NCBI RefSeq assembly: GCF_902459465.1
Contig: NC_047074.1
Coordinates: 12,400,001-12,464,000, forward strand
DNA: 64,000 nt
Origin: Asterias rubens
Taxonomy: Eukaryota
Reading direction: 5' to 3'
The translations under genes were made by a program, and so were the position numbers. Below the pieces are notes generated by a model. That model saw only the letters and a list, made by a program, of their open reading frames with translations. It ran no database searches and was not told the DNA's origin. Positions 16,710 to 45,500 of this stretch are shown here, one piece after another (position 1 is the stretch's first letter; each line of letters begins with the position of its first letter).

Positions 16710-17117
<408 letters not shown>

Positions 17118-17149
17118 GCTGTGAAGCTTCAAGCTTCTTAAAACCAACC

Positions 17150-17186
17150 GGCTCTTTTCAGAGCCACCACATCTTCAAAAAAGAGA
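17150..17186 (+). terminator. Histone 3' processing signal (stem-loop plus HDE); same signal after all six histone genes
   Basis: GGCTCTTTTCAGAGCC-ACCA followed about 10 nt later by CAAAAAAGAGA; also at 19502, 26971(-), 28166, 30070(-), 31327. Confidence 0.95.
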
Positions 17187-18861
17187 TCAATACCTTGTTC
17201 TGTTTTTATATAAATGAAAATAAATAATAAAGTTTAAAATTTATACAACGATTTATAAGACTACTACTGGCTTTTAATATTTATTTAGTACACCAGTATT
17301 TACCTATGCAATTTATATTTTTAAATTCAATGAACTGTAGTACCCCTGGCTGGGTACATTCATGGTTATAATATTATGGAAACCATAATAATTATTTAGT
17401 AGAATAATTTGTTAAAACTTGGTAATTACCGTAAACAAATTGACTGTCCAAAAACAAAAAAAGGAGGCAGAACTGGGAGAGTCGTGATTCGCAACGCACA
17501 TGCTTTTTGCCCTTGCTTGCAAGGGAAGAAGTTACAGTGTCGGTATGTGTCACGTAGTACCCGAGTGTGTAAACATCCCCCCATGTACATGTATGTACAG
17601 TACATTGTACATGTACCCAAGAAGGTACTGTTCATTTGTACACGTGTATATAATACAGTCTGCTCGCCAAATTACCACAAGAAGAGGGCAAAAAAGAAAA
17701 AGTGTAATATTGAGATTGGGACTTCAGAATCAATCATACTCTTTTATAGTGAGTGGTGACGTAGGATTGAAATACGACATTTGGGGTAACACCATGACTA
17801 TCTCTAATGAGTTGTGCATGGAGGTATTTCTACCTCCATGGTTAGGGGGGGGGGGGGGTTCTGAAAAGAACCGTTGTAACTCGACGTTTCGATCAGTATG
17901 CTTCCGATCATCTTCTGAACTATTTTTATTGGGATGTGTTACATGTTCAAAGTAGTGGTCGACGAAATAGTTCACAAAAAAGGCAAATATTGAAATGTCC
18001 GCTAAGTGGACATTTTCAACATTTGCCTTTTTTTACTTGTTTAGAAAGAAACAGTAAACCCTTCTGCAATCATCTGTTACCTGACTTTGTTGACAGATTA
18101 AATTCATTTCAAACTCTATAAATGTCTTTCATTAGGTAAATTACATAGTTAAAAGATCATATAGATGAAAACAATTCATCGTTGGAAATTGATTAAAAAA
18201 ACCAACGTCGACTCGAACCTATATTTTCTTGGAGTAGGAACGTTCCGCTAGTCGGATTTACACATGAATCAAAATGTTGTCACAGTCACTTGCAGTTTTA
18301 TTTGTAAACAATGAAGACACGACTTGTGTGTTCTGTGTAAAACGAAGTATGTTAATTTAAAAACAGGATAGGGATAAAGAATAATTCATTTTGGTTCTAA
18401 AACGATGTGTGTCTTCACTGTATACTCAGTAATGTATTTATTTTATTTATTTATTTTAATTCTTCGGACAAAAGCCTACAAACAAACATTATAAAAATAA
18501 GCAGAGGCCGTCCAGGGGATCAAAAGCAAAATTAAAATGTCATCAAAAAAGATGTGCCCTCCCATACCTTACTCGTAAAAAGGGTAAAAATATATGCTAA
18601 AAGTATATACTATACATAACACAGATATCTAAAAATTCCCTGAGTTCTGCGAACAAAATCAGAGGCATTCCATTAGGACTAAATAATGGCAATAGTTTTT
18701 CAAGTAAATTAAATTATGCCAATGCAAATGTACAAAACCGATATTATTATTTTCCCGCAAGAAGAACCAACCTGCATTCGTTCAGTACATGTGCAACATC
18801 ACAGCCCAAAACGTGTACAAACCTATGGGCACACATACAGCGGGAAGGTTTCACGTCCCAA

Positions 18862-19471
<610 letters not shown>

Positions 19472-20500
19472 GAAGGGACTTCCCAAATCCCCAAAACCAC
19501 CGGCTCTTTTCAGAGCCACACAAAGTCAAAAAAGAGAATGATACCAATGTCTGATTTGTAGGATTAAATAATGAAACTAATTCAATGATTTTTAGTACCG
19601 AATATAATTAAAAGTTTAAATAAATAATGTTTATAAATAATCAACCTTTTCCAACTGCCTTGGTTATTTTTCTCAGATTATGCAAATACAGACCTCTCAT
19701 TTAGACAATTATTCTTGAATAACGGATCTGGGAGGGTTTGCATGTATTTGTATGAACATGTTTTGGGGGTAGTTTCAGTTCATTTACCATGAATTTGTTG
19801 TGTTCAATAAAAGTATTCAATCTGTGGTAAAAGTACATGTAGTGCCTACATGGTATGACTCGAGTCTAAAAGTGTACATGATGTAGGTCAGCCCTTATAA
19901 GTTATACTGTATAGAGAAATTATAAGTTTTTAAAATGCTATTTGGAATAATACAACCTAGCATTTTAACCTCTTCTAGCTGTCGGAATTATTTCTCTCTG
20001 ATGAATCTGAATATTAAACAAGAAGCTAGTTCAAGAAATAGAGACAATTAAATTCTAAAAACATTTCAGTTGTGGAACAGATTTGGGAAGGGGTTTGCTT
20101 GACTTTTATAAAAATGTTTTGGGGTTGCAGTCTTTGTTGGGCTTGTGTTCACATTAATAATATTAATTATCCACAGTCTGCGGACATTGTGTTTTGCGCT
20201 CTCTTGTGCCCTACAAGACAAACATGACATCTTTTCTACAATGTACATGATGTAACTCAGCCCCTTGTATTGTACTTTTCCTTACTCTTTTCTTGATAGA
20301 CCTGTGGACAAGTTGTTAAATTTCTGTTTGCCCTCTAACAACGGCTCTCTAAAAACTATCTTGCATAAAACCCTTTTTTTTCGCACCAGACTACTGCTTT
20401 CACCACTACGGACCAATGAGGGAGGGCAGGGTACATGTACAAGTACATGTCATTTTCTTTCGCCTGAAGTTTGTTGTGTTGGAAAAAATGGGTTCAAATC

Positions 20501-22268: not shown

Positions 22269-25200
22269 ATGGCATCCAACATGGATCACCATACCAATAG
22301 CTCTACCTCCTTGGATGAGCCAGACAACCAAGACATAGCAACCACTGTCGTCCAGGCAACCACTCTCAGTCTCATCTTCCTAATCGTCTGCTTCCTTAAC
22401 TTTCTCGTCACGTTCACATTCTATAAGAAGGCTTACCTTATGACGCCGAGCAACAGGTTCGTCTTCAGTCTGACGCTGTCTAATTTTGTCGGTGGCGTTG
22501 TGGTTCTTCCGTTTAACCTGATCAGCTGCTTGTGTCACGAGTGGATCTTTGGGGTTATGTGGTGCAATCTGACAGGGTTCGTCACGGTGTCTGTCACGGC
22601 TGGTAGCCTCCTCACCTTGACCATAATCACTGTTGACAGGTAAGATTAGAGCTTTATTAGTTTGATTTGGGGTTGAACAAAGAATCAATTTATAGAGTGG
22701 GACTCGAACCAATGACCTACGGAAAAATTCACTCGCTGAATTGTTTGGATTTGAACCAACAATCCTTGCAGTCAAGACCCGAGTCAAATTTTGTAGAGCT
22801 ACTTTAGCAGCAATATTACCATATTATGGAACATGTGACATGGTAATATTGCTGCTAAGGTAGCTTAACTTGTATCCTACTATTATTGCTTTTTAGCAGA
22901 AAATTGTCCAGCAATATTTTTGGCTTAAGTAACTTCTTGTGAGTGCTTCGTGTTCGTACAAAGCAAATTTGACATCACAGCTCTGTATTTGCTGCGAATG
23001 TTTCACAAGAGTAAAGCACAGCTCACAGCTTTAGTTTTTCATTTGGGGACTTCTCATTTGGTCCAGACAGTTTACCCACAAACAGATGATGTTACCGAGA
23101 GTTTTGAGAGACATTTGAGCTGCAAAACAATTATGTTGACAAAATGTTCTGACATAGAAGTGGTGACTGGGCTTATAAAAATTGAATTGTTTAATTATTT
23201 TTCAAATCCAAGACTTTTCAGATACACAAAATAGCCTCAGTGTCAACAAATCTGAAGTGTGTTTGAAGGGGCGGGGGGGGGGGGCGGTGCCTAAGTCATT
23301 GTTAGCAGTGACACATACTGCATAAAGTAGAGTGTTTTATTTTATTTTATTCTATACCATGAAGTGTTTTTGCAGTGTCAACAAATCTGTGTACATGTAA
23401 TGTGTGCGTGGGGTGCCCAAAGTAGTGAACAGTGACACATACTTCTGAAAGTACAATGTATTTTTTAACTTTAGTCTATGCCATGAAGTGTGTTTTAATA
23501 CTTTTATTCTTTTTCTTTACAGATATTTCGCAATATCACAGCCGATGATGTACCCAATAAAAGTGACATGCACAAGGACTGTAGAGTTAATCGTTCTCGT
23601 GTGGATTCTTGCCCTAGTATGTAGTCTTCCTCCGGTCTTCGGTTGGTCTCAGTATCGCTACAACCAATCAAGATCCAGTTGCTTCATCAACTGGAGTCAT
23701 CACCCATCTTACGCAGTTTTCTTCTCAGTTGCTTACGTCTGCACCCCGCTACTAATCATGTCTTGGTGCTATGTGAAGATTTTACAAGTAGCCCATGTGC
23801 ACAAGAGGAGAGTAAGTAATGGGAGTGTCGTTGCCACGGGAACCCTTCGGAATCGCAGAGGCTCTCGTCGGACTTCTCTACTGGTGAATATACGAATGAG
23901 TTCGCCTTTTAAGGCGATGAGAACTGTTGTGCTAACGATGGGAGCTTTTTGTATAATATGGGGACCAGTGACAGTGGAACTTCTGTACGAGGCATTTAAC
24001 GGCATTCTTAATATACCTCACTGGGTGTTGACCTCCGTGACCTCTCTGTGGTACGCAAGTTTTATCATGCACCCTCTTGTGTATGCCGTTTGGAACAGGA
24101 GTATTCGAAGGGAGCTTCTCTCTTGGTTTTGTTCTCGAGGACGATGGCTGGATGATGAGATGCCGTTATTTGCTCCGAGGAATAAAGAGACGCGGGCCGT
24201 GAGCATAAGTGGGAGTATTGGAGATCTTAGTTTTGCAACATCAGTACAGAATAAAGCATCTTCTTTGGGTGTCACTACTGGTGCAACTCTTCCATACAAC
24301 TCAAGCAACGACTCAGGTAAGTTTGTTTTAAACCGAGGGTCGGATTTGAGTTATCTCTTCAGACTCATCTTTTTAAGAGTGTGGATCGGAAATTATCAAG
24401 AAAGAAATTGTATTACTTTCAAAATAAGTTTTGATCAATTGCAAAAAAATTCATAAATTTCAATTGCTGCAATGGAGGTAAACCCGATATGAACAGGGGC
24501 AAAATCAAAAGCTAAGCACAACAAAATTATGCTTGGCATAATAAAGTTAAACCAACCATACCATTTCACATATTATTTGTTACTAGAGTGCTCATTTTTT
24601 CTCATTAGGAAATTGTTAAGCAATATTTTGGGGTCATGGATGATCCCTGAAAAACCATTTTGTGCTCACAGCATGTTCATAGGTTTTGATATTATTATTG
24701 AATGTGTCTATGCTTTCAAAATACAATGCATGCAAATGATTGACTGCAAGCCCACCCCCCCCCCCCCACCCCAACCGCAATATCATACACATCATATTGT
24801 ACACACGTCACAATTTTTAGAGGGACTTCTTTACACAAGGTATAATCTTGGTATACAGGTATTCCTTCATCTCCCTTTAAAAGCAATGGACACTATTGGT
24901 AATTACTCAAAATAATGATTAGCACAAAACCTTACTTGGTAACGAGTAATGGGGAGAGGTTGGTAGTATAAAACATTGTGAGAAACAGAAGTAACGTAGT
25001 TTTCGAGAAAGAAGTAATTTTCCACAAATTTGGTTTCGAGACCTCAGATTTAGAACTTGAGGTCTCGAAATCAACCATCTGAAAAGCACACAACTTTGTG
25101 TGACAAGGGTGTATTTTCTTTCATTATTATCTCGCAACCTCGACGACCGATTGAGCTCCAATTTTCACAGGTTTGTTTTTTTATGTATATAATGAGATAC

Positions 25201-28200
25201 ACCAAGTGGGAAGACTGGTCTTTGACAATTGCCAATAGTGTCCAGTGTCTTTTACCATTTTTATCTAAAATATGTTTTTCTTGTAGCCCCTTCTAATTTT
25301 TGCATAGTTGGGGTCTTTGCCATAAAATGTTTATTTACAATGCCAAATGTTTTGAAAAATGTGTCCTTCTGAAATACTACAGTACTTTTTTTGCATAGCA
25401 AAACTGCTATACAAAATGCTTTTTTTGTATAGCAAAATCATAGCACTGTAGCAGTCCATAAACTTTGCATACATTTTTTGGGGTAAGCAAAATCATACTT
25501 TTACCATAGCAGTCCATAAATTTTGCATAGCAAATTTAAAAGTGGTTAAAAAATCATGATTCTTGAAATGATGTATACTTACTATAAAAGTCATTTTCGA
25601 GGCAGAAGTGATACGAATGAGAAAGAATTAACTGTACAAGTACATGTAGGCCTACAGTGTGTTTATACAATATCCCATGAAACCGGTTTGATGTATTATT
25701 GTGGTCATTGAAAATAAGGAAATATTAAAATTAAGTGTACTTGCACCCCCCCCCCCCATATTAAACAAGCAGATCACAAATATATTATATAAATTGTCAT
25801 TTAGGAGAAAAATATGTACCCCCCCCCCCTGTGTAATTTGTGTTGTACCTTGCATGGGCTAGAATGTTGTCTTTTATTTTTAAGACAATAAAAAGAAGTC
25901 CCACCCAAAACCATGTACTTTCAATGATCACTACTGCAGTTTTTCAGCCAAAGTAACACTACATGTACATTGTGACCTTCTAGGAATTTTATATACATTT
26001 TTTACTTTGCAAAAGCTTTGAAATTACATCTTTTTTGAGATTAATTAAGTAAATGTCTGTTGTTGTGAGATTCGTTAATGATAGTTGAACCGTTGTCATA
26101 GTTCCTTGAGTACATGATGTGACACTATCATTTTTTTTTAAAGTAAAACCTTGATTTTGAATGAAATTGTTCTTGTATATTCATGTTCAAAATATTTTTG
26201 TGCATGGGTATGCAAACAAAACTTGTCACTCGAAGTTTTGAGGCAAACTTGCTACTAAGGCCTGCTTTTCATCAATTATTTTAAATTAATACAATTTGTG
26301 TTCATCTGATTGTCTTTTCATTCTTTAGGTATTTAACTGAAGTGATACCGCTTCTATTTAATGATTGATTGGCTATTTCTCTCATTAATACGAAAGTTAT
26401 TGTAAACTGAAGGCATAACTTACTTACTGTAGTTCAGGGCAACTATTAAATTCGGTGCAGATTTTGTTTATGGCATCTACCTGACAGGCTTATCATGGTT
26501 GTCTCTTTCCAAGCCTAATAAGAATATTTTGTGGAGGAACAGCACATTTCGAAGCTCCATGGTAATTACTTAAAATGGGACACTACATTCCAATTCTTGC
26601 ACATACGTGTGTACAGTACAATGAATGTACATGTATATGGGATTGGATGGGTGGCAAGTCTTTCTTTTAATCTTTGCATCCCTATTCCTGTCAATAATAA
26701 TAATAATAACCCGTTTTTATATTGTATCAACCTGCAATTTTGACATATCTGAATTGAACCCTAACATATTTATTGCTCCCATGGATTTTTATTTTAAATG
26801 CTTTAGGGTAATAAATATAATTGCGATGGACCCCTATAGGCCTACAACAAAAGAAACTCTATTTAGAATAAAATAATATGATATTAATATTTAATATTCA
26901 ACTGAAACTAAGAAGCTTTATTTAAAATAAAATCAGACAAAAGTTTAAATCTCTTTTTTGAAGGTGTGGTGGCTCTGAAAAGAGCCGGTTGGTTTTAGAG
27001 CTGGTAATTCAGCGCTTATTTGGCAGCCTTGGCGGTCTTCTTGGGCAGAAGAACAGCCTGGATGTTGGGCAGTACACCTCCCTGGGCGATGGTGACTCCA
27101 CTGAGAAGCTTGTTCAACTCTTCGTCGTTGCGGATGGCGAGTTGCAAGTGACGGGGGTTGATTCTCGTCTTCTTGTTGTCACGGGCGGCGTTACCGGCCA
27201 ACTCGAGGATCTCAGCGGCCAAGTACTCCATGACGGCAGCCAAGTAGACCGGGGCACCAGCTCCGACTCTCTGGGCATAGTTTCCCTTGCGAAGGAAACG
27301 GTGGACACGGCCCACGGGGAACTGAAGTCCGGCTCTTGAAGAGCGGCTCTTTGCCTTGGAGCGGGCTTTTCCTCCTTTTCCTCGTCCAGACATGATGTTT
27401 ATTTTTGGTGGTTTGGCGTATTAGATACGAATGATGAATATGATGTTCGTCAGCCTTTTTATACGGTTTCAGGGGTTTCACGTACTGTCCAATCACGAAC
27501 GAGATCTCTTAAAGTCCCGCCTATTTTTACCGCAGCAGTTGTGCGCCTGAAGAAAGTGTGTGTAATGTACATAACATTGTGCACACAAACGATTCGGCGC
27601 GACCGCGTTAGCGATCCCATCACCAACCAATCACATATCGCGATTCTAGGATCCTCGCTACAATCCGTTCCTGGATCCTTCATTTGCATACTGGATGGTA
27701 TAAATAGCGCTGAAACGCTAATGGTCTTCATTCTTGCAATTTTTGCGAAACAACCGAATAACAATCATGCCACCCAAGCCAAGCGGAAAGGGACAGAAGA
27801 AGGCCGGTAAGGCTAAGGGAGCTCCCCGTACCGACAAGAAGAGACGCAGAAAGAGAAAGGAGAGCTATGGAATCTACATCTACAAGGTGATGAAGCAAGT
27901 GCACCCAGACACCGGCATCTCCAGCCGTGCCATGAGCATCATGAACAGCTTCGTCAACGACATCTTCGAGCGTATTGCCGCCGAGGCTTCCCGCCTGGCC
28001 CACTACAACAAGAAGTCCACCATCACCAGCCGTGAAGTCCAGACCGCAGTCCGACTCCTTCTGCCCGGTGAGCTGGCCAAGCACGCTGTCAGCGAGGGAA
28101 CCAAGGCTGTCACCAAGTACACCACCTCCAAATAGACGGTGTATTTGTACGCCTCAAAACCAACCGGCTCTTTTCAGAGCCACCATATTTTCAAAAAAGA

Positions 28201-31200
28201 GAAATAACCATTCTGTCTGATTTTGTGTCCCAATAACATTAAACAAATAGAGCTTTAAAAAAATTATTTGCATGAATGATGTAGGCACTAAGCCTAGTCC
28301 ATCAATGAAGAGGAATTTGAAGAGTTTAAAATTTTCACAGGTTTGTTAATTTTTGCATATTATTAATGTTAAGATACACCAATTGTAAAAAGTGGTCTTT
28401 GACCATTGCATTACAAATAGTGTCTTTAAAATAGGGTTAAACAAAAATCAAACTTTAAAAAGTTAGTGCAATGATTTTGCCCGGTTTTTTTAGTGGATTA
28501 GGGGAAATGCCACCTGGGACTAAATATGAAAAACAATAAGACCATTATTTATTGTATACGGAAAAGAAAATTGCTGTATTTCCCCCAAAATGACAGTCGT
28601 GTACAAGTATTAGTAATGTACAATGTAGACATTATGTAAACTCCTTCAAATTTTAAAAAGGCGCTTTTATTGATTTTTGTTGGTGTGGGGTCGTTATTAT
28701 TTATGGACAAAAGTACAATATTTTCAAATCCTTTCAGACCCATAAAATAATTAAAAAGATGAAAGCTGACAAACCCAAACAATGGAGGGCATGCAGTAAA
28801 TGCCCCTATCTTAATTCACAGGAAAGTTTAAAATAGTACCTTAGATCAATCAAAGTCGAGGTTTAAAAATTATCTACTCTTTTTAGGTCGAATAATACAT
28901 GTACATGTACATGTATAGGTTTTTTTTCACCAAGCTATTCTTTTTCGCGCGAAATCGAATGCTACTAAAAAGGGTCATTTGATTTTGTTTTATGAATATG
29001 ATTACTCAAATGTAATGCTGCGTCGTTCGATTTAACAAAATATAATCATTCATTACAGCAGAATTCAAATTCGCAGACGCTTCTTGAGGCGTGTGTGTCA
29101 CGAAAACGAATGACGATAAGCTAAATTGAACAGAGCGCTAAAGGAATTTGACTTGACTCAAAACGAAATTGAATGGCCGAATTCCGAATTTAAAACGCAG
29201 TAACAACTGAAGAGGCAAAACAGCTTTAATTCGAACGCATGCAAAATAAGTGCAACGATTTTGCTTGTGGATGGGGAAAGTTGCGCCTGGACGCCTACTC
29301 ACAAAAATGATTGTTCATGTACATGTACATATGTATAAAGAAATTTGCTGTAAAAAAACAGGTAGGCCCCCTGCTCACGTTGGTAATTACTAATTATGTG
29401 CATTAGCATAAAAAGTTACTTGGGATTGAGCAACTGAGTGACAGCTGTTGATAGCGATAGTATAAAACATTGTGAGAAGCGACTCCCTCTGAACATAGAG
29501 CAAGGCTCTGAAGTAGCGTAGTAGTTGAGAAAAAGGTGGAGGGAGGATTTGCAAATAATATTTTATAATTTGTCTTCTTCCATCAACAATAACCCCCCCC
29601 CCCCACAAAAAAAAAAAAAAAACGCGGCTTTTTTAAATTCTGAATAATATCAAACGGCTTCCAAAGGAAGTTTACATTATTATCTACCATGAGAAACACA
29701 CCTGTTTTGGGGCTAAAAACTATCTTTGCATTTTTATATATTTAAAAATACCTGACGTTAACTTCAGCTTGTTAAAACTGAAAATAATGAACATGGCATG
29801 CATGAAATTAATTTTGGATTCTGAAGCTCACTCAAAAAAAAAAAAATATTGATAAAGTGGTAAAAAAAAGAAATCTTTAGAGTTACGATTAAAATTAAGT
29901 ACAAACAATCAAGGTTTTTAGTTCAAATTCCTCTCCATCGATGGACTCCAGAAAAAAACTAGCCAATGAAGTAATAATATAAAGAAGTTATTTTTTAATA
30001 GCTCTATTTATTTAATATTGGGACACAAAATCAGGCAGATTGGTTACTTCTCTTTTTTGAAAATGTGGTGGCTCTGAAAAGAGCCGGTTGGTTTTGAGGC
30101 GTACAAATACACCGTCTATTTGGAGGTGGTGTACTTGGTGACAGCCTTGGTTCCCTCGCTGACAGCGTGCTTGGCCAGCTCACCGGGCAGAAGGAGTCGG
30201 ACTGCGGTCTGGACTTCACGGCTGGTGATGGTGGACTTCTTGTTGTAGTGGGCCAGGCGGGAAGCCTCGGCAGCAATACGCTCGAAGATGTCGTTGACGA
30301 AGCTGTTCATGATGCTCATGGCACGGCTGGAGATGCCGGTGTCTGGGTGCACTTGCTTCATCACCTTGTAGATGTAGATTCCATAGCTCTCCTTTCTCTT
30401 TCTGCGTCTCTTCTTGTCGGTACGGGGAGCTCCCTTAGCCTTACCGGCCTTCTTCTGTCCCTTTCCGCTTGGCTTGGGTGGCATGATTGTATTCGGTTGT
30501 TCGCAAAATTTGCAGAATGACGGTTACCCAAAATACTCGGCTTTAAATACTTTTTCTATATGCAAATTAGGATCCAGTGCAGATTTTTCGTGAATACTTA
30601 TCCCAATCGCCCGCTGAAATTTCCCACTGAATTTTACGAAACTTGATTGGTTGTTGTGCGACCGTGAGCCCACAAAGGCTGTGTGGATGTGTATGCGGGA
30701 CGTGTGCAAACACCTGCCAAGGCACTCGCTCTACACCGTGTACCCATATTGTAAACAGGTGCACAAAGGGGGTTCGTCGTAGGCGGGTTTTCGGTACTTC
30801 GTGTTATGATTGGTCAATGCATGGATCCTCCGTTGGATGCCAGGAAACCCTATAAAAAGGCTGACTTGGAATTTATTAGGCATTCGTTCTCGTTCAAGTA
30901 ACTACACGAAATAATCATCATGTCTGGACGTGGTAAAGGAGGAAAGGCACGCGCCAAGGCAAAGAGCCGATCTGCAAGAGCTGGGCTTCAGTTCCCCGTG
31001 GGCCGTGTCCACCGTTTCCTTCGCAAGGGAAACTATGCCCAGAGAGTCGGAGCTGGTGCCCCGGTCTACTTGGCTGCCGTCATGGAGTACTTGGCCGCTG
31101 AGATCCTCGAGTTGGCCGGTAACGCCGCCCGTGACAACAAGAAGACGAGAATCAACCCCCGTCACTTGCAACTCGCCATCCGCAACGACGAAGAGTTGAA

Positions 31201-32977
31201 CAAGCTTCTCAGTGGAGTCACCATCGCCCAGGGAGGTGTACTGCCCAACATCCAGGCTGTTCTTCTGCCCAAGAAGACCGCCAAGGCTGCCAAATAAGCG
31301 CTGAATTCTCGGCTCTAAAACCAACCGGCTCTTTTCAGAGCCACCACACTTTCAAAAAAGAGATTTAAACTTTTGTCTGATCGTTTTTAAATAAAGTTTT
31401 CTTAGTTAAACAATAAATTAATTTTTATTTACTAGAGTTTCCTTATTTATATTCCACGCTATAAAAAAAAAAAGTTGTTACCCTTTTTAAACATTAAACA
31501 TTTTTATGGGCAATAAAAAGTTTAGGGTTCAAAAGTGTCCCCAGCCTTTGCAGGTTGTTAAACGGAATGCTTAATGTAGAACTCTCAACCCAACTTCAAA
31601 AACTCTTTCACACATGTGGGATGTCGTGTGCATGAATTTGTGTGCATCTCGTAGTTTAAAGGTGGTGTCTTGTCTGCTCCCCAAAATATTATTATATTAT
31701 TCTTCTATGAGAATGATTAAGAAAGAGACGATCATGTACAGATGCCATTAAATAAAAAATTCTGTCTGTTGCCCTGAAGTTACAAATTCAGTTAAGTTCG
31801 ATAACTTTCTAACTGATGATGACTGGAGCAAGCTAGTCGAAATGTTGAGACCAATTTAAGAACTGACTCTGCGGTAGTGCAGTTAACTACGATCCTATAA
31901 GCTAAAATAGTACAATGTAGTCCCAGCTAGTAGTCCCAGTCAATTTTTCTACACCTTCCGGCTAGTAGTTAAAAAGCAGGTCAGTTCTTTTCAGAACTGC
32001 GAAGTCTCCCGAACAACCAATAAATGTACTCCGCAATAGTAGAATAAAGAAAGATAGTTCTCTAAGAACAAACTCTACCTGACAAGTAGATACAAACACT
32101 GTGTCACCGCAAACCAAATTATACTGTATATTGATACCTCACCATGCAATGCCTCAAATCCTTTAAAGTTTCTAATTAGCGAGAGAAATAGGCAGACATT
32201 TATAGAAGTGAAAGTACAATCAGATGGACACAAATATAATTCAAACAATTGGCATTTGACAAGAACAAATCATTACGGGTCTCAAGACTCGATGGAAGAC
32301 AGCGACAAGATAGCTTTGACACTGCTCTAGAATTGCAAAGGTCGTGGGTTCGAATCCCACCCGAGTAAAATGCCTGTGATTTTTTTCACAGGACTCGGGA
32401 AAGTACTGAGTATACAGTGCTACACACATCGGTGTATATGGGTAAAAACCAAAAATTAATATTAAGATAGCTTTGATACGAGAGGACTGTTTTTAAAAGA
32501 TGAAGGTATTTTTGAAGATGCACAAATACATTGGACGTAATAACAACTATTTCAAACAAATTAAAGGTTTTACTTTCAGAAATTTAGTGAATGGTCACAT
32601 GTACTCATGGAACTATGATATCAATTCCGCTATCGATAACAAATCTCACAACAGAAGACGCCCTCCGGGTGTGAAAAGCGCTATTATTATTATTATTGTT
32701 TTTATTATTATTTCTTGTTCTAGGTACGGTACTTACTTGCATTGAAGAGAGCGACGACGTTGGAGATAGTGGCGATCTCATCTTGAGGATGCAGCCCAAC
32801 TCCCTAGCAAGGAGAAGACCCGCAACCAAGGGGAACCCCCTTCAGACTGTGGTGGATGTTCATACTCCTATCGGGTTTATTCAGGGGTCTCAAGACTCGC
32901 TGGAAGACGGCGATAAGATATCTGTGATAGGAGAGGAGGAGGACTGTAAAGATGAAGGTATTCTTGAAGATGCTTAG
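22269..32977 (+). CDS. GPR161: GPR161-like class A GPCR, 3 coding exons, 472 aa
   Basis: Exons 22269-22639, 23523-24316, 32724-32977 (phase 2 then 1). [34 protein letters not shown]|[18 protein letters not shown] and NDSG|T resemble vertebrate GPR161; terminal exon inferred from acceptor ttgttctag, phase match and acidic tail. 5' UTR acceptor at 22152. Confidence 0.85.
24881..25250 (+). mobile_element. Kolobok-like MITE family A
   Basis: Family A body and TIRs. Confidence 0.85.
27016..27393 (-). CDS. H2A: Histone H2A, copy 1
   Basis: 125-aa H2A; stem-loop 26971-26986 and downstream element 26950-26960 on minus strand; TATA 27456-27463. Confidence 0.99.
27394..27766. promoter_or_regulatory. 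Divergent H2A/H2B promoter 1
   Basis: TATA on each side, CCAAT boxes, H2B octamer element. Confidence 0.85.
27767..28135 (+). CDS. H2B: Histone H2B, copy 1
   Basis: 122-aa H2B from ATG 27767; octamer ATTTGCAT 27682-27689, TATAAATA 27699-27706; stem-loop 28166-28181; downstream element 28192-28202. Confidence 0.99.
30116..30484 (-). CDS. H2B: Histone H2B, copy 2
   Basis: Protein identical to copy 1; octamer (ATGCAAAT on plus) 30560-30567; stem-loop 30070-30085. Confidence 0.99.
30485..30919. promoter_or_regulatory. Divergent H2B/H2A promoter 2
   Basis: TATA on each side, CCAAT/ATTGG boxes, octamer; GAAACC.TATAAAAAGGCTGAC shared with promoter 1. Confidence 0.85.
30920..31297 (+). CDS. H2A: Histone H2A, copy 2
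   Basis: 125-aa H2A differing from copy 1 at two N-terminal residues; TATAAAA 30851-30857; stem-loop 31327-31342; downstream element 31353-31363. Confidence 0.99.
31760..32160 (+). mobile_element. Penelope-like terminal-repeat fragment with degenerate hammerhead motif
   Basis: CTGATGA..GACTGG/CTAGTC..GAAATGTTGAGAC at 31813-31851; body homologous to 61920-62330. Confidence 0.6.
32320..32463 (+). mobile_element. 5'-truncated tRNA-SINE with 13-bp TSD
   Basis: TSD AAGATAGCTTTGA at 32307-32319 and 32464-32476. Confidence 0.85.
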
Positions 32978-42500: not shown

Positions 42501-45500
42501 TTTCTTGTGGTTTAGTACTTCAAATAACTTAGATAAGACTTTTAAGGCAATGCATGGTGGAAAATACTCAGTAAAGGCCGAGTCACACTGCAGCGATAAC
42601 AAAAACGATAACGATCACGACGCAAAGAAAACGCATTCTATTGGTTGAATTGCTCCACGCAGAATACGCACACGCTCATTCAACCAATAGAATGCGTTCC
42701 CTTTGCATAACAATCGTTATCGTTTTCGTTATCGCTGCAGTGTGACTCAGCCTTTAGTAAGGTTGGCGGCGACACCATGTAAGAATCTCTTTTGTGAGTA
42801 GTGGTGGCGCTGAGAAGAACCGGTTTGTACTGCTCATCATTTCGGTCAGTGTGCTCTGACCGTCTTCTGGTCAGAGCAAACTGACCGAAACATTGACCTG
42901 TTCAAATCATTATACAAAATATTGAGGAGACATTTTGAGACATACATTTCTTGACCGTTGTCTTGACATTTGGTGAGCTTCCCGGTATTGTCCACATGAG
43001 CTGGGAGCACACAGTGTTCTGCTCCGTCCTCTTCCGCCAGTCATGGCACATCTGGGTCACGGTCACTTTGGTATTCAGCACAGTACGAGTTGCCTGATAA
43101 CAGGAAAATTTAAGACATTTGTTTTATTGGTATTTAGCATAATTTTATTACCACGCATCATCGAGTTCACTTCCCGCCTCTATTTCCCGCCTTCATGCAT
43201 CACCGCTGATCCGCCGCCCAGTACTTAAGCAGCATGCAGCATCAGAGTCCAGCATTCTCCAGAAGACGATCAGAGCATACTGATCGAAACGTCGAGTTAA
43301 TCCAACGGTTCTTTTCAGAACCACCCCAACTCATTTAGAGATTGTTATTACATGGTGTTACCGCAAACTTTTCTATAATTTTATTTTTTTTTTTTGATTT
43401 TTGATTTTTTTTTTTTTTTTTTGGGGGGTACCCTTTAATGTTTGTGTTAGCCCTATTTACTCAGTACTTTCCAGAGTTCTGTGAAAAAAAAATCACAGGC
43501 ATATTACTCATATTCGAGCCCAGCGTGTGTGTTTTTCTTGAGCGCATGCGTGGTAGCTCCAGCTAAACCAGGGTCCTTGGTTTACGTGTGCGGTGTTCAT
43601 TCACACAGTAGTGTCATTTTCACAAAATTATATTTTTTGGTCGTTGGTCCCGATCATGGTCATAAAAAGACTAGAGACTCGTGCTTGTTTAGAGAAGAGG
43701 TGCATTGTACTCTATTTGGACTTGACAATGTTGTGTTCTAAGGACTGTGGACCCCCTGCTTATTTCCCTTCAGCCTTAGCTGTAGCGGCCAATTTGGCCA
43801 CACCCTAAAACTCCTTACCTGAGCAGGATGAGACGGAGATGTTTTATTATTATTTATTTTTTTTATTTTTTATTTTTTTGGGGGGGTGGGTGGGGGGGTA
43901 CCCTTTAATGCTTGTGTTAGCACTGTATACTCAACTCCGCTCAGAGTTCTGTGGAAAAAAAATCACAGGCATATTAGTCAGATTCAAACACGATCTAAAA
44001 CTCCTCACCTGAGCAAGATGAGACAAAGATGTTTTCCTCTTCAGAAGATGACAAAATCTCTTTGCGACTGAAATTACAAAAATTATGAGAGTTATACAAT
44101 CACCCATAACCCTATTTCATCGAGCTGCTTGAAGAGCAAGAAAAATGTAAAATTAAAAATTGAGTTCCATGGGGAGGCAAACGAGTCCCCTGCCTCTGTT
44201 GCTTTGGTATTTACCTTGATGCTTCCTCAAAATGTTCTTAAAGAGGAAGGAAAGTCAAATTAAATTTTGTGGTGTTTTTCATTTTCCCAATAATAGATAA
44301 AATTCTCACGTGAGTGGGGAAAAAGTACAAGTCTCTAACCTCACAATTATGTGGTGTAAATAGCCATTTCTTCGTGGGTCGTGGGTTCGAATCCCGTGGG
44401 TTTGAATCGTTGCGGTGCCCGCTGCCAAAACATAGGATTCGAACGGCCTCTAGCTACCGGGCAACCTCGGTAGTCTAGTTGGTAAGACACTGCTCTAGAA
44501 TTGCAAGGGTCGTGGGTTCGAATCCCACCCGAGTAACATGCCTGTGATATTTTTCACAGGACTCGGAAAAAGTACTGAGTATACAGTGCTAACACACATC
44601 GGTGTATGGGTAAAAACCAAAATTAATATTCTTTATCCCCGATGCAAATTTAACATCTATTATATCGTTGCGGTACCCGCTGCCAAAACATAGGATTCGA
44701 ACTGCCTCTAGCTACCAGGCAACCTCGGTAGTCTAGTTGGTAAGACACTGCTCTAGAATTGCAAGGGTCGTGGGTTCGAATCCCACCCGAGTAACATGCC
44801 TGTGATATTTTTCACAGGACTCGGGAAAGTACTGAGTATACAGTGCTAACACACATCGGTGTATGGGTAAAAACCAAAATTAATATTCTTTATCTCCGAT
44901 GCAAATCTAACATCTATTATATCGTTGCGGTACCCGCTGCCAAAACATAGGATTCGAACTGCCTCTAGCTACCGGGCAACCTCGGTAGTCTAGTTGGTAA
45001 GACACTGCTCTAGAATTGCAAGGGTCGTGGGTTCGAATTCCACCCCAGGAACATGCCTGTGATATTTTTTCACAGGACTCGGGAAAGTACTGAGTATACA
45101 GTGCTAACACACATCGGTGTATGGGTAAAAACCAAAATTAATAGCCATTTCTTCATTTCTGTGGATGACAAATCACTGCAAGAATTGACTCATCGCTCAT
45201 GAGCGAGCCTGTGCCAGAACTCACTCTGTTTGATGAGCTATCTACCTTCTTTTGATCCACCGAGTTGTGCCTGCATCAGTTGTTTTTATCTTGTTTGCTC
45301 TACATAGTGGATATCGCTAAGCGATAGACAGCCTATATACAATATCCTTCCTGGGCAATATTTGTCAATATCATAAACATTCGATGATCACTCTAAGAAA
45401 AATGAGTCTGATAAACCATTTTGTCACTGCACATGGCATGGATGGTGGACTTTTTCCGTAATACATTTCTCACCTTCCATTCGTCTGAGATGCAAAGACT

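What the first reader, a model, noticed from the sequence alone, without database searches (positions are those of the whole stretch)
24317..32723. Four histone genes appear nested in the last intron of GPR161
GPR161 exon 2 ends GAC TCA G|gtaag (phase 1) at 24316. The phase-matching acceptor with a GPR161-like acidic tail (G|GT ACG = DSGTV..IEE, compare human DSGTDMMLLED) is at 32724. Between them lie H2A(-), H2B(+), H2B(-), H2A(+), each with its own TATA/octamer promoter and stem-loop/HDE. Host pre-mRNA would cross two sense-strand U7/SLBP cleavage signals (28166, 31327), so S-phase histone processing could truncate the transcript of a ciliary Hedgehog-pathway receptor, coupling GPR161 isoform output to the cell cycle (inference).
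Basis: partly seen in the sequence, partly recalled or inferred. Interest (0 to 1): 0.8.

Follow-up and report, generated by a model that had tools for sequence, protein, structure and literature searches.

The report
Histone genes nested inside starfish GPR161
In this sea star four ordinary histone genes really do sit inside the last intron of the GPR161 receptor gene, an arrangement shared by at least three sea star genera and already present in public annotation, but nothing yet shows that it ties the receptor to the cell cycle.

Summary
Joining 22269-22639, 23523-24316 and 32724-32977 gives a 472-aa protein identical to the NCBI model "GPR161-like [Asterias rubens]". The public annotation already places H2A(-), H2B(+), H2B(-) and H2A(+) inside that gene.

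- **Exon 3 is real.** Its tail (GTVLTCIEE...DEGILEDA) is conserved in four sea star assemblies, with dN/dS 0.08-0.15. The same start, GTVLTC, occurs in an acorn worm, and the tail aligns with the human GPR161 tail.
- **The intron is old, the histones are not.** The intron (phase 1, GAY TCA G|gt) is present in seven species of sea stars, sea urchins, a sea cucumber and an acorn worm, and in a crinoid by exon mapping. It is 0.5-3 kb and histone-free in two urchins, a crinoid and an acorn worm. It is 6-10 kb with H2A/H2B pairs in Asterias, Patiria and Acanthaster.
- **The receptor is interleaved with a histone cluster.** H4 and H3 lie just upstream of exon 1 in all three sea stars.
- **The processing signals are complete.** Every histone gene has a perfect stem-loop plus purine-rich downstream element, and two of them face the host's sense strand.

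The proposed S-phase truncation of the receptor transcript is untested. Read-through tails after exon 2 are not conserved, and I found no transcript data. I read this as a conserved host/nested gene pair: an annotated but apparently undescribed curiosity. An overlapping note from this scan (s1-151343) covers the H2A/H2B palindrome.

The parts
16806..17117 (+). Histone H4 gene, upstream of the receptor; its stem-loop is at 17145-17191
   Evidence: ORF, tblastn, Rfam, 3' signal
19061..19471 (+). Histone H3 gene, about 2.8 kb upstream of the receptor ATG; its stem-loop is at 19497-19542
22269..22639 (+). GPR161-like coding exon 1 (ATG to GAC AG|gtaaga; the DRY motif is split by intron 1)
23523..24316 (+). 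GPR161-like coding exon 2 (TM3-TM7, helix 8 and proximal tail; ends GAC TCA G|gtaagt, phase 1)
24317..32723 (+). Intron 2 (8407 nt), host of the four histone genes
   Evidence: the intron position is conserved in seven species
26329..26337 (+).
   Evidence: sequence only; no conservation detectable
26946..27393 (-). Histone H2A gene (CDS 27016-27393) with stem-loop/HDE at 26946-26991; antisense to the host
27394..27766 (.). Divergent H2A/H2B promoter 1 (TATA boxes, CCAAT, octamer ATTTGCAT)
27767..28205 (+). Histone H2B gene (CDS 27767-28135) with stem-loop 28166-28181 and HDE; sense to the host
30045..30484 (-). Histone H2B gene (CDS 30116-30484) with stem-loop/HDE at 30045-30090; antisense to the host
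30485..30919 (.). Divergent H2B/H2A promoter 2
30920..31367 (+). Histone H2A gene (CDS 30920-31297) with stem-loop 31327-31342 and HDE; sense to the host
32724..32977 (+). GPR161-like coding exon 3 (completes the Gly codon, then TVLTCIEE...KDEGILEDA and the stop)

Best explanation
The window is the Asterias rubens GPR161 ortholog, a gene of three coding exons. Its second coding intron is ancestral to echinoderms and hemichordates. In sea stars this intron has become home to one or two divergently transcribed H2A-H2B pairs, while H4 and H3 sit just upstream of exon 1. The receptor gene is therefore interleaved with a replication-dependent histone quartet.

Shown: the exon structure; the identity of the product with the public model; orthology to GPR161; purifying selection on the distal exon; complete promoters and stem-loop/HDE signals on all histone genes; and the presence of the nesting in three sea star genera but not in sea urchins, a crinoid or an acorn worm.

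Inferred: the histone genes act as autonomous S-phase transcription units, and the receptor pre-mRNA is transcribed through them and spliced 24316->32724. The arrangement is tolerated because the two are mostly active in different cell states. SLBP-dependent processing and histone promoter firing are confined to S phase. Any truncation or interference during S phase would be a by-product, not a demonstrated regulatory device. The block has probably persisted since before the split of the forcipulatid and valvatid sea stars simply because neither partner can be removed without damage.
For: - The spliced CDS equals P0001 exactly, and P0001 is named GPR161-like [Asterias rubens].
- The public annotation of LR699104.1 gives the same gene range with four histone genes inside.
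- The best solved-structure match is GPR161 (8smv, E 9e-74) against 1.8e-29 for the next receptor, and that alignment runs across the exon 2/3 junction.
- A profile search retrieves hemichordate and vertebrate GPR161.
- The exon 3 tail is conserved in Patiria, Acanthaster and a fourth asteroid assembly, with dN/dS 0.08-0.15 and an AG acceptor in every one.
- The donor GAY TCA G|gt sits at the same position and phase in seven species, and the acorn worm exon 3 starts GTVLTC.
- Intron 2 holds H2A-/H2B+/H2B-/H2A+ in Patiria and H2A-/H2B+ plus an assembly gap in Acanthaster.
- It is 0.5-3 kb without histones in Lytechinus, Diadema, Saccoglossus and Anneissia.
- All histone 3' ends carry a stem-loop plus HDE; the stem-loop is perfect in all but Patiria's H2A(-), which has one stem mismatch, and Acanthaster's H2B(+) end is hidden in an assembly gap.
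Against: - No transcript data were reachable, so the 24316->32724 junction rests on conservation and on a public gene model whose support I could not see.
- A search for spliced transcript fragments across the junction found only a genomic exon 3 contig.
- The claim of temporal separation of host and histone expression is inference from general knowledge of SLBP and histone regulation.
- Two complete sense-strand processing signals have been kept in the intron, so some effect on the host cannot be excluded.
Confidence: 0.75

Rival explanations
1. In S phase, U7 snRNP/SLBP cleave the receptor pre-mRNA at the sense-strand H2B (about 28186) or H2A (about 31347) signals, or firing of the nested promoters blocks host elongation. 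Dividing cells then make a tail-less or unstable GPR161 message and only non-S-phase cells make the full receptor. This would be a selected coupling of a ciliary Hedgehog-pathway receptor to the cell cycle.
For: - Two complete sense-strand stem-loop/HDE signals lie in the intron in Asterias and in Patiria.
- The arrangement is conserved across three genera.
- There is a mechanistic precedent: active transcription of the nested gene Mcts2 drives premature termination of its host H13 (PMC13309782).
- In vertebrates the distal tail of GPR161 holds the PKA-binding helix that is critical for its ciliary function (bioRxiv 10.1101/2023.05.23.540554).
Against: - There are no expression data.
- The read-through coding tails after exon 2 differ among species: a 46-aa extension in Asterias, E-stop in Patiria, a different tail in Acanthaster and KR-stop in Apostichopus. 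No truncated isoform looks selected.
- No conserved non-histone block, including the region around 26329, exists in the intron.
- A divergent pair necessarily places one gene in sense, so the orientation carries no signal.
- Conservation is equally explained by slow rearrangement.
- From my own knowledge, not checked here: histone 3' signals work poorly when far from a promoter or in spliced transcripts (Pandey et al. 1990, Nucleic Acids Res).
- The PKA-binding helix is not clearly identified in echinoderm GPR161.
Confidence: 0.12
2. Annotation artefact. The receptor ends before the histone genes, at intron read-through or at the 26329 mini-exon, and the 32724 ORF is a separate or non-functional piece wrongly joined by a homology-driven gene model.
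For: The Apostichopus model ends by reading into the intron (DSGKR-stop), which shows that such models exist. I saw no direct junction reads.
Against: - Exon 3 has no initiator ATG of its own at the conserved start, and its first in-frame start is TTG inside the polypyrimidine tract.
- Its dN/dS is 0.08-0.15 over four species, always with an acceptor in the matching phase.
- The same GTVLTC/AVLAC start follows the same donor in the acorn worm and the crinoid, where the intron is short.
- The tail aligns with the human GPR161 tail.
Confidence: 0.03
3. The nesting arose independently in different sea star lineages, or reflects assembly error around a palindrome, and is not a single ancient event.
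For: Within a species the two H2A/H2B pairs are 95-99% identical, against 84-91% between species. The Acanthaster assembly has a 655-nt gap exactly after the H2B stop.
Against: The order and orientation are the same in three independent assemblies: tRNA-synthetase gene, H4+, H3+, receptor exons 1-2, H2A-, H2B+..., exon 3, RFX-. The promoters of the two pairs are only about 70% alike within a species. That fits an old duplication with gene conversion confined to the genes.
Confidence: 0.07

Closest known systems
Host/nested gene pairs in animals (catalogued for mouse and human in PMC11694760)
   Same: Independent protein-coding transcription units lie wholly inside a long intron of a host gene. 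Both orientations occur, as reported there ('no strong orientation bias').
   Different: Here the nested genes are replication-dependent histone genes with U7/SLBP-type rather than poly(A) ends. They form an inverted duplicate of a divergent pair, and the host is flanked by the rest of the histone quartet.
H13/Mcts2 locus (PMC13309782)
   Different: That case is imprinted, uses intronic polyadenylation, and is shown experimentally. Here no host truncation has been observed, and the candidate signal is a histone stem-loop/HDE.
Vertebrate GPR161 (structures 8smv and 8kh4)
   Same: It is the best match by far (E 9e-74). The 7TM core, the W and R of the reported sterol site, and the DSGT...LE(E/D)..SDD tail motif are shared.
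   Different: The sea star tail is shorter. The PKA-binding helix is reported as not clearly identifiable in echinoderms. I did not test for it.
Echinoderm histone gene clusters (sea urchin quintets; sea star clusters of Cool et al. 1988, as cited in PMC13525598)
   Same: Canonical core histone genes with stem-loop and HDE, and H2A/H2B as a divergent pair.
   Different: This cluster is interrupted by the coding exons of a non-histone gene. A 2026 review of histone gene organisation in over 250 species uses neither 'nested' nor 'intron of'.

Membership tests
GPR161 orthologs | Rhodopsin-family seven-transmembrane domain | tested here: met
   Pfam 7tm_1 on exon 1 (E 4e-12) and exon 2 (E 6e-23), together covering profile positions 2-260
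GPR161 orthologs | Closer to GPR161 than to any other receptor | tested here: met
   PDB search: GPR161 at E 9e-74 and 1.4e-67, next best 1.8e-29. The profile search returns named GPR161 of hemichordate, amphibians and mammals, and representatives include amphioxus and mammalian GPR161.
GPR161 orthologs | Sterol-site residues I7.52, W7.56 and R8.51 (bioRxiv 10.1101/2023.05.23.540554) | tested here: inconclusive
   My reading of the alignment: W and R are kept ([15 protein letters not shown] against pliyglWnktvRkel) and I7.52 is V. The residue numbering was not checked.
GPR161 orthologs | C-terminal amphipathic helix that binds PKA type I regulatory subunits | not tested
   [quoted passage not shown] I ran no helix or binding analysis.
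Replication-dependent histone genes | Intronless ORF encoding a canonical core histone | tested here: met
   ORFs of 125 aa (H2A) and 122 aa (H2B), 96.7-98.4% identical to the Patiria and Acanthaster copies. The public annotation lists Pfam Histone and Histone_H2A_C.
Replication-dependent histone genes | 3' stem-loop followed by a purine-rich downstream element at fixed spacing | tested here: met
   Rfam RF00032 at 40-42 bits against a threshold of 34. The signal is GGCTCTTTTCAGAGCC-ACCA-N7-CAAAAAAGAGA on all four genes.
Replication-dependent histone genes | S-phase-restricted, non-polyadenylated mRNA | not testable with these tools
   Needs expression data
Host/nested gene pair | Nested gene lies entirely within an intron of the host | tested here: met
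   The histone units span 26946-31367, inside intron 24317-32723. Exon 3 is validated by conservation and by the public model.
Host/nested pair with transcriptional interference (H13/Mcts2 type) | Host transcripts terminate prematurely when the nested gene is active | not testable with these tools
   No transcript or 3'-end data. There is no conserved truncated-isoform coding tail.

The most novel reading that the evidence does not exclude
In sea stars, histone 3'-end processing (U7 snRNP/SLBP) or firing of the nested histone promoters cuts short GPR161 pre-mRNA specifically in S phase. Production of the full-length receptor with its distal tail would then be gated to non-replicating cells. 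This would be a cell-cycle switch built from a nested histone cluster and kept since the origin of crown sea stars.
Probability: 0.1. Interest if true: 0.7.

Novelty: new member of a known kind. Interest (0 to 1): 0.33.

Why it matters
If the arrangement is only structural, it is a tidy, datable example of a histone cluster colonising and surrounding a conserved receptor gene. It would be useful as a synteny marker for sea stars and as a caution for gene annotation: the same region also yields fused H4-H3 models and a truncated sea cucumber model. If the host transcript is indeed cut at the sense-strand histone signals, it would be the first case I know of in which U7/SLBP processing regulates a non-histone host gene. 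It could be tested directly in Patiria embryos.

Tried and rejected
1. **Spliced transcript fragments.** I searched 5.8 billion proteins with the last 143 residues. Only a 683-nt genomic contig holding exon 3 of another sea star came back, so there is no junction evidence.
2. **Conserved non-coding or alternative-exon sequence in the intron.** blastn against Patiria and Acanthaster found only the histone units.
3. **Orthology of individual H2A/H2B pairs from their promoters.** All pairs are 66-75% alike. Only Patiria pair 2 with the Acanthaster pair stands out, so the result is inconclusive.
4. **The stem-loop at 43302-43348 as a fifth histone gene (H1).** Rejected: no histone ORF lies upstream and the stem is the variant GGTTCTTTTCAGAACC. 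It may be a copy of the dispersed hammerhead-plus-stem-loop repeat noted elsewhere in this genome, which I did not test.
5. **The stem at 31982-31999 in the intron.** It shares only a 16-base core (GGTTCTTTTCAGAACC) with that stem-loop and is below any Rfam score.
6. **Two ENA contigs with exon 2-like ORFs (P0006, P0023).** They gave no DNA. Their called genes have no histone domains, but the taxa are unknown.
7. **The bacterial-type promoter/terminator scan** is not informative for this genome.
8. **Literature searches for histone genes nested in introns** found no such description.
Full report
**1. What is in the sequence**

The region holds two ORFs with rhodopsin-type 7TM matches, at 22269-22639 and 23523-24316. 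They are joined by an intron that splits the DRY motif (GAC AG|gtaaga ... cag|A TAT). Exon 2 ends GAC TCA G|gtaagt at 24316, in phase 1.

Downstream lie four histone ORFs:

| Gene | Coordinates | Strand |
|---|---|---|
| H2A | 27016-27393 | - |
| H2B | 27767-28135 | + |
| H2B | 30116-30484 | - |
| H2A | 30920-31297 | + |

Rfam finds a histone 3' stem-loop above threshold behind each of them, and also behind an H4 gene (16806-17117) and an H3 gene (19061-19471) upstream of the receptor. All six 3' ends read GGCTCTTTTCAGAGCC, ACCA, seven bases, then CAAAAAAGAGA. That is a complete stem-loop plus purine-rich downstream element.

The two divergent promoters carry TATA boxes, CCAAT boxes and the H2B octamer. 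At 32722-32723 an AG follows a long pyrimidine tract. The frame that completes the split Gly codon stays open to a stop at 32975-32977.

**2. Is 32724-32977 really the last exon?**

- The three pieces joined in silico translate to 472 residues. These are identical to P0001, the NCBI/UniRef protein "G-protein coupled receptor 161-like [Asterias rubens]".
- The public annotation of assembly GCA_902459465.3 (record LR699104.1) gives this gene exactly that range and lists the four histone genes inside it. The arrangement is therefore already in a database, although I could not see what evidence supports the model.
- Independent support comes from conservation. The tail GTVLTCIEE...DEGILEDA is present in the Patiria miniata and Acanthaster planci proteins. 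It is also present in a 683-nt genomic contig of a fourth sea star assembly.
- Codon-level comparison of exon 3 gives dN/dS of 0.08-0.15. Every species has a pyrimidine tract and an AG in the matching phase.
- The donor GAY TCA G|gt is at the same codon position in the three sea stars, two sea urchins, a sea cucumber and the acorn worm Saccoglossus. The Saccoglossus exon 3 begins with the same GTVLTC, and the crinoid exon 3 begins AVLACIQE.
- The alignment to the solved human GPR161 chain runs straight across the junction: [13 protein letters not shown]..sdd against sqdsgtdmmlled..sdd.

A stand-alone gene or an annotation artefact is therefore very unlikely.

**3. Is it GPR161?**

- Against all PDB chains, the two GPR161 entries score E 9e-74 and 1.4e-67. 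The next receptor scores 1.8e-29.
- A profile of the echinoderm proteins retrieves Saccoglossus "GPR161-like" and then amphibian and mammalian GPR161.
- An exhaustive search of cluster representatives gives Saccoglossus first, then amphioxus GPR161-like and two mammalian GPR161 representatives.
- A structural paper on GPR161 states that the receptor and its sterol-site residues are conserved to sea urchin. [quoted passage not shown]

Orthology is well supported. The function of the sea star tail is not known.

**4. History of the arrangement**

| Species | Group | Intron 2 | Histone genes inside |
|---|---|---|---|
| Asterias rubens | sea star | 8407 nt | H2A-, H2B+, H2B-, H2A+ |
| Patiria miniata | sea star | about 9.8 kb | H2A-, H2B+, H2B-, H2A+ |
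| Acanthaster planci | sea star | about 6.0 kb | H2A-, H2B+, then a 655-nt gap |
| Lytechinus pictus | sea urchin | about 0.6 kb | none |
| Diadema antillarum | sea urchin | about 1.5 kb | none |
| Anneissia japonica | crinoid | about 0.5 kb | none |
| Saccoglossus kowalevskii | acorn worm | about 3.1 kb | none |

- In Acanthaster the assembly gap starts right after the H2B stop, so a second pair cannot be judged.
- In all three sea stars the neighbours are the same: a tRNA-synthetase gene, H4+, H3+, the receptor, then an RFX gene on the other strand.
- Diadema keeps the tRNA-synthetase gene next to the receptor without histones between them.
- The Apostichopus model simply reads into the intron and stops (DSGKR). 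A 2.4-kb gap lies downstream, so that class is unresolved.

The simplest reading is that the intron is ancestral and that a histone quartet came to surround receptor exons 1-2 in the sea star lineage. This happened before the split of Forcipulatida (Asterias) and Valvatida (Patiria, Acanthaster). From general knowledge, that split is on the order of 200 million years old.

Within a species the two pairs are 95-99% identical over genes and 3' ends. Between species they are 84-91% identical, and the two promoters of one species are only about 70% alike. This fits an old inverted duplication homogenised by gene conversion. Another note of this scan describes it as a palindrome.

**5. How it probably works**

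Shown here: the histone genes have everything needed to act as autonomous units, and the full-length receptor mRNA must be made often enough for selection to maintain exon 3.

Inferred: polymerase starting at the receptor promoter crosses both pairs, and the intron is removed by splicing from a consensus donor (CAG|GTAAGT). Histone transcription and SLBP-dependent cleavage are confined to S phase (general knowledge). A receptor expressed mainly in non-replicating cells would therefore meet little conflict.

It is mechanistically conceivable and has a precedent in kind at H13/Mcts2, where nested-gene transcription terminates the host early. Nothing here speaks for selection on it, however:

- The coding tails produced by reading into the intron differ in every species.
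- No non-histone block in the intron is conserved.
- A divergent pair unavoidably puts one gene in sense.

I put this reading at about one in ten.

**6. Novelty**

Nested genes are common: 12-17% of mouse and human genes host one. The gene models are public. I found no paper describing histone genes nested in a host intron or this locus. A 2026 review of histone gene organisation in over 250 species uses neither "nested" nor "intron of". The Plazaster genome paper lists GPR161 as its top positively selected gene but does not mention histones.

I class the finding as a new member of a known kind. It is confirmed, conserved and mildly surprising, and it carries a testable but unsupported functional hypothesis.

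Noticed in passing
window 16806-19471; L001 6223-8475; L002 6410-8836: In all three sea stars the public annotation fuses the H4 and H3 genes into one product (249, 241 and 285 aa) running from the H4 start to the H3 stop. This is either a model artefact or a sign of read-through past the H4 stem-loop with splicing into H3.
   Followed up: no
window 32277-32319 and 32496-32521: A decayed duplicate of the 3' end of exon 3 (88% and 96% identical to 32885-32927 and 32948-32973) lies inside the intron. It is split by about 175 nt that include a tRNA-like segment (ggtcgtgggttcgaatccc), probably a SINE. The contig of the fourth sea star matches both pieces as well.
   Followed up: partly
window 43302-43348: A histone-type stem-loop (Rfam 35.6 bits, stem GGTTCTTTTCAGAACC) with no histone ORF upstream, inside the RFX gene region. 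It may belong to the dispersed hammerhead-plus-stem-loop repeat noted elsewhere in this genome.
   Followed up: partly
L002 15095-15749: The Acanthaster assembly has a 655-nt gap starting nine bases after the H2B(+) stop codon, exactly where the stem-loop and possibly a second inverted pair would lie. The 'single pair' there may be an assembly effect. The letters were not sought elsewhere.
   Followed up: no
L004 12235-12244 and 13183-15606: The Apostichopus japonicus 'putative GPCR' model (397 aa) ends by reading through the conserved donor (DSG-KR-stop). It is probably truncated, and a 2.4-kb gap follows.
   Followed up: partly
L007 1-1984 and 10001-14131: Diadema antillarum keeps the tRNA-synthetase gene next to GPR161-like, as in sea stars, but on the opposite strand and with no histone genes between them. 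This is a piece of old microsynteny.
   Followed up: no
window 27394-27766 versus 30485-30919: The two H2A/H2B promoters of one species are only about 70% alike, while the genes and their 3' signals are 95-99% alike. Gene conversion seems to stop at the start codons.
   Followed up: partly
window 44464-45051: Three tRNA-like matches at about 258-nt spacing (Rfam RF00005, 44-48 bits). Another note of this scan reads them as a trimeric tRNA-SINE.
   Followed up: no
window 22153: An acceptor-like site (ctcttttcag|GTGCC) lies 116 nt upstream of the receptor ATG, with upstream ATGs between them. This suggests at least one non-coding 5' exon further upstream. If that exon lay beyond H3/H4, those genes would be nested too.
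   Followed up: no
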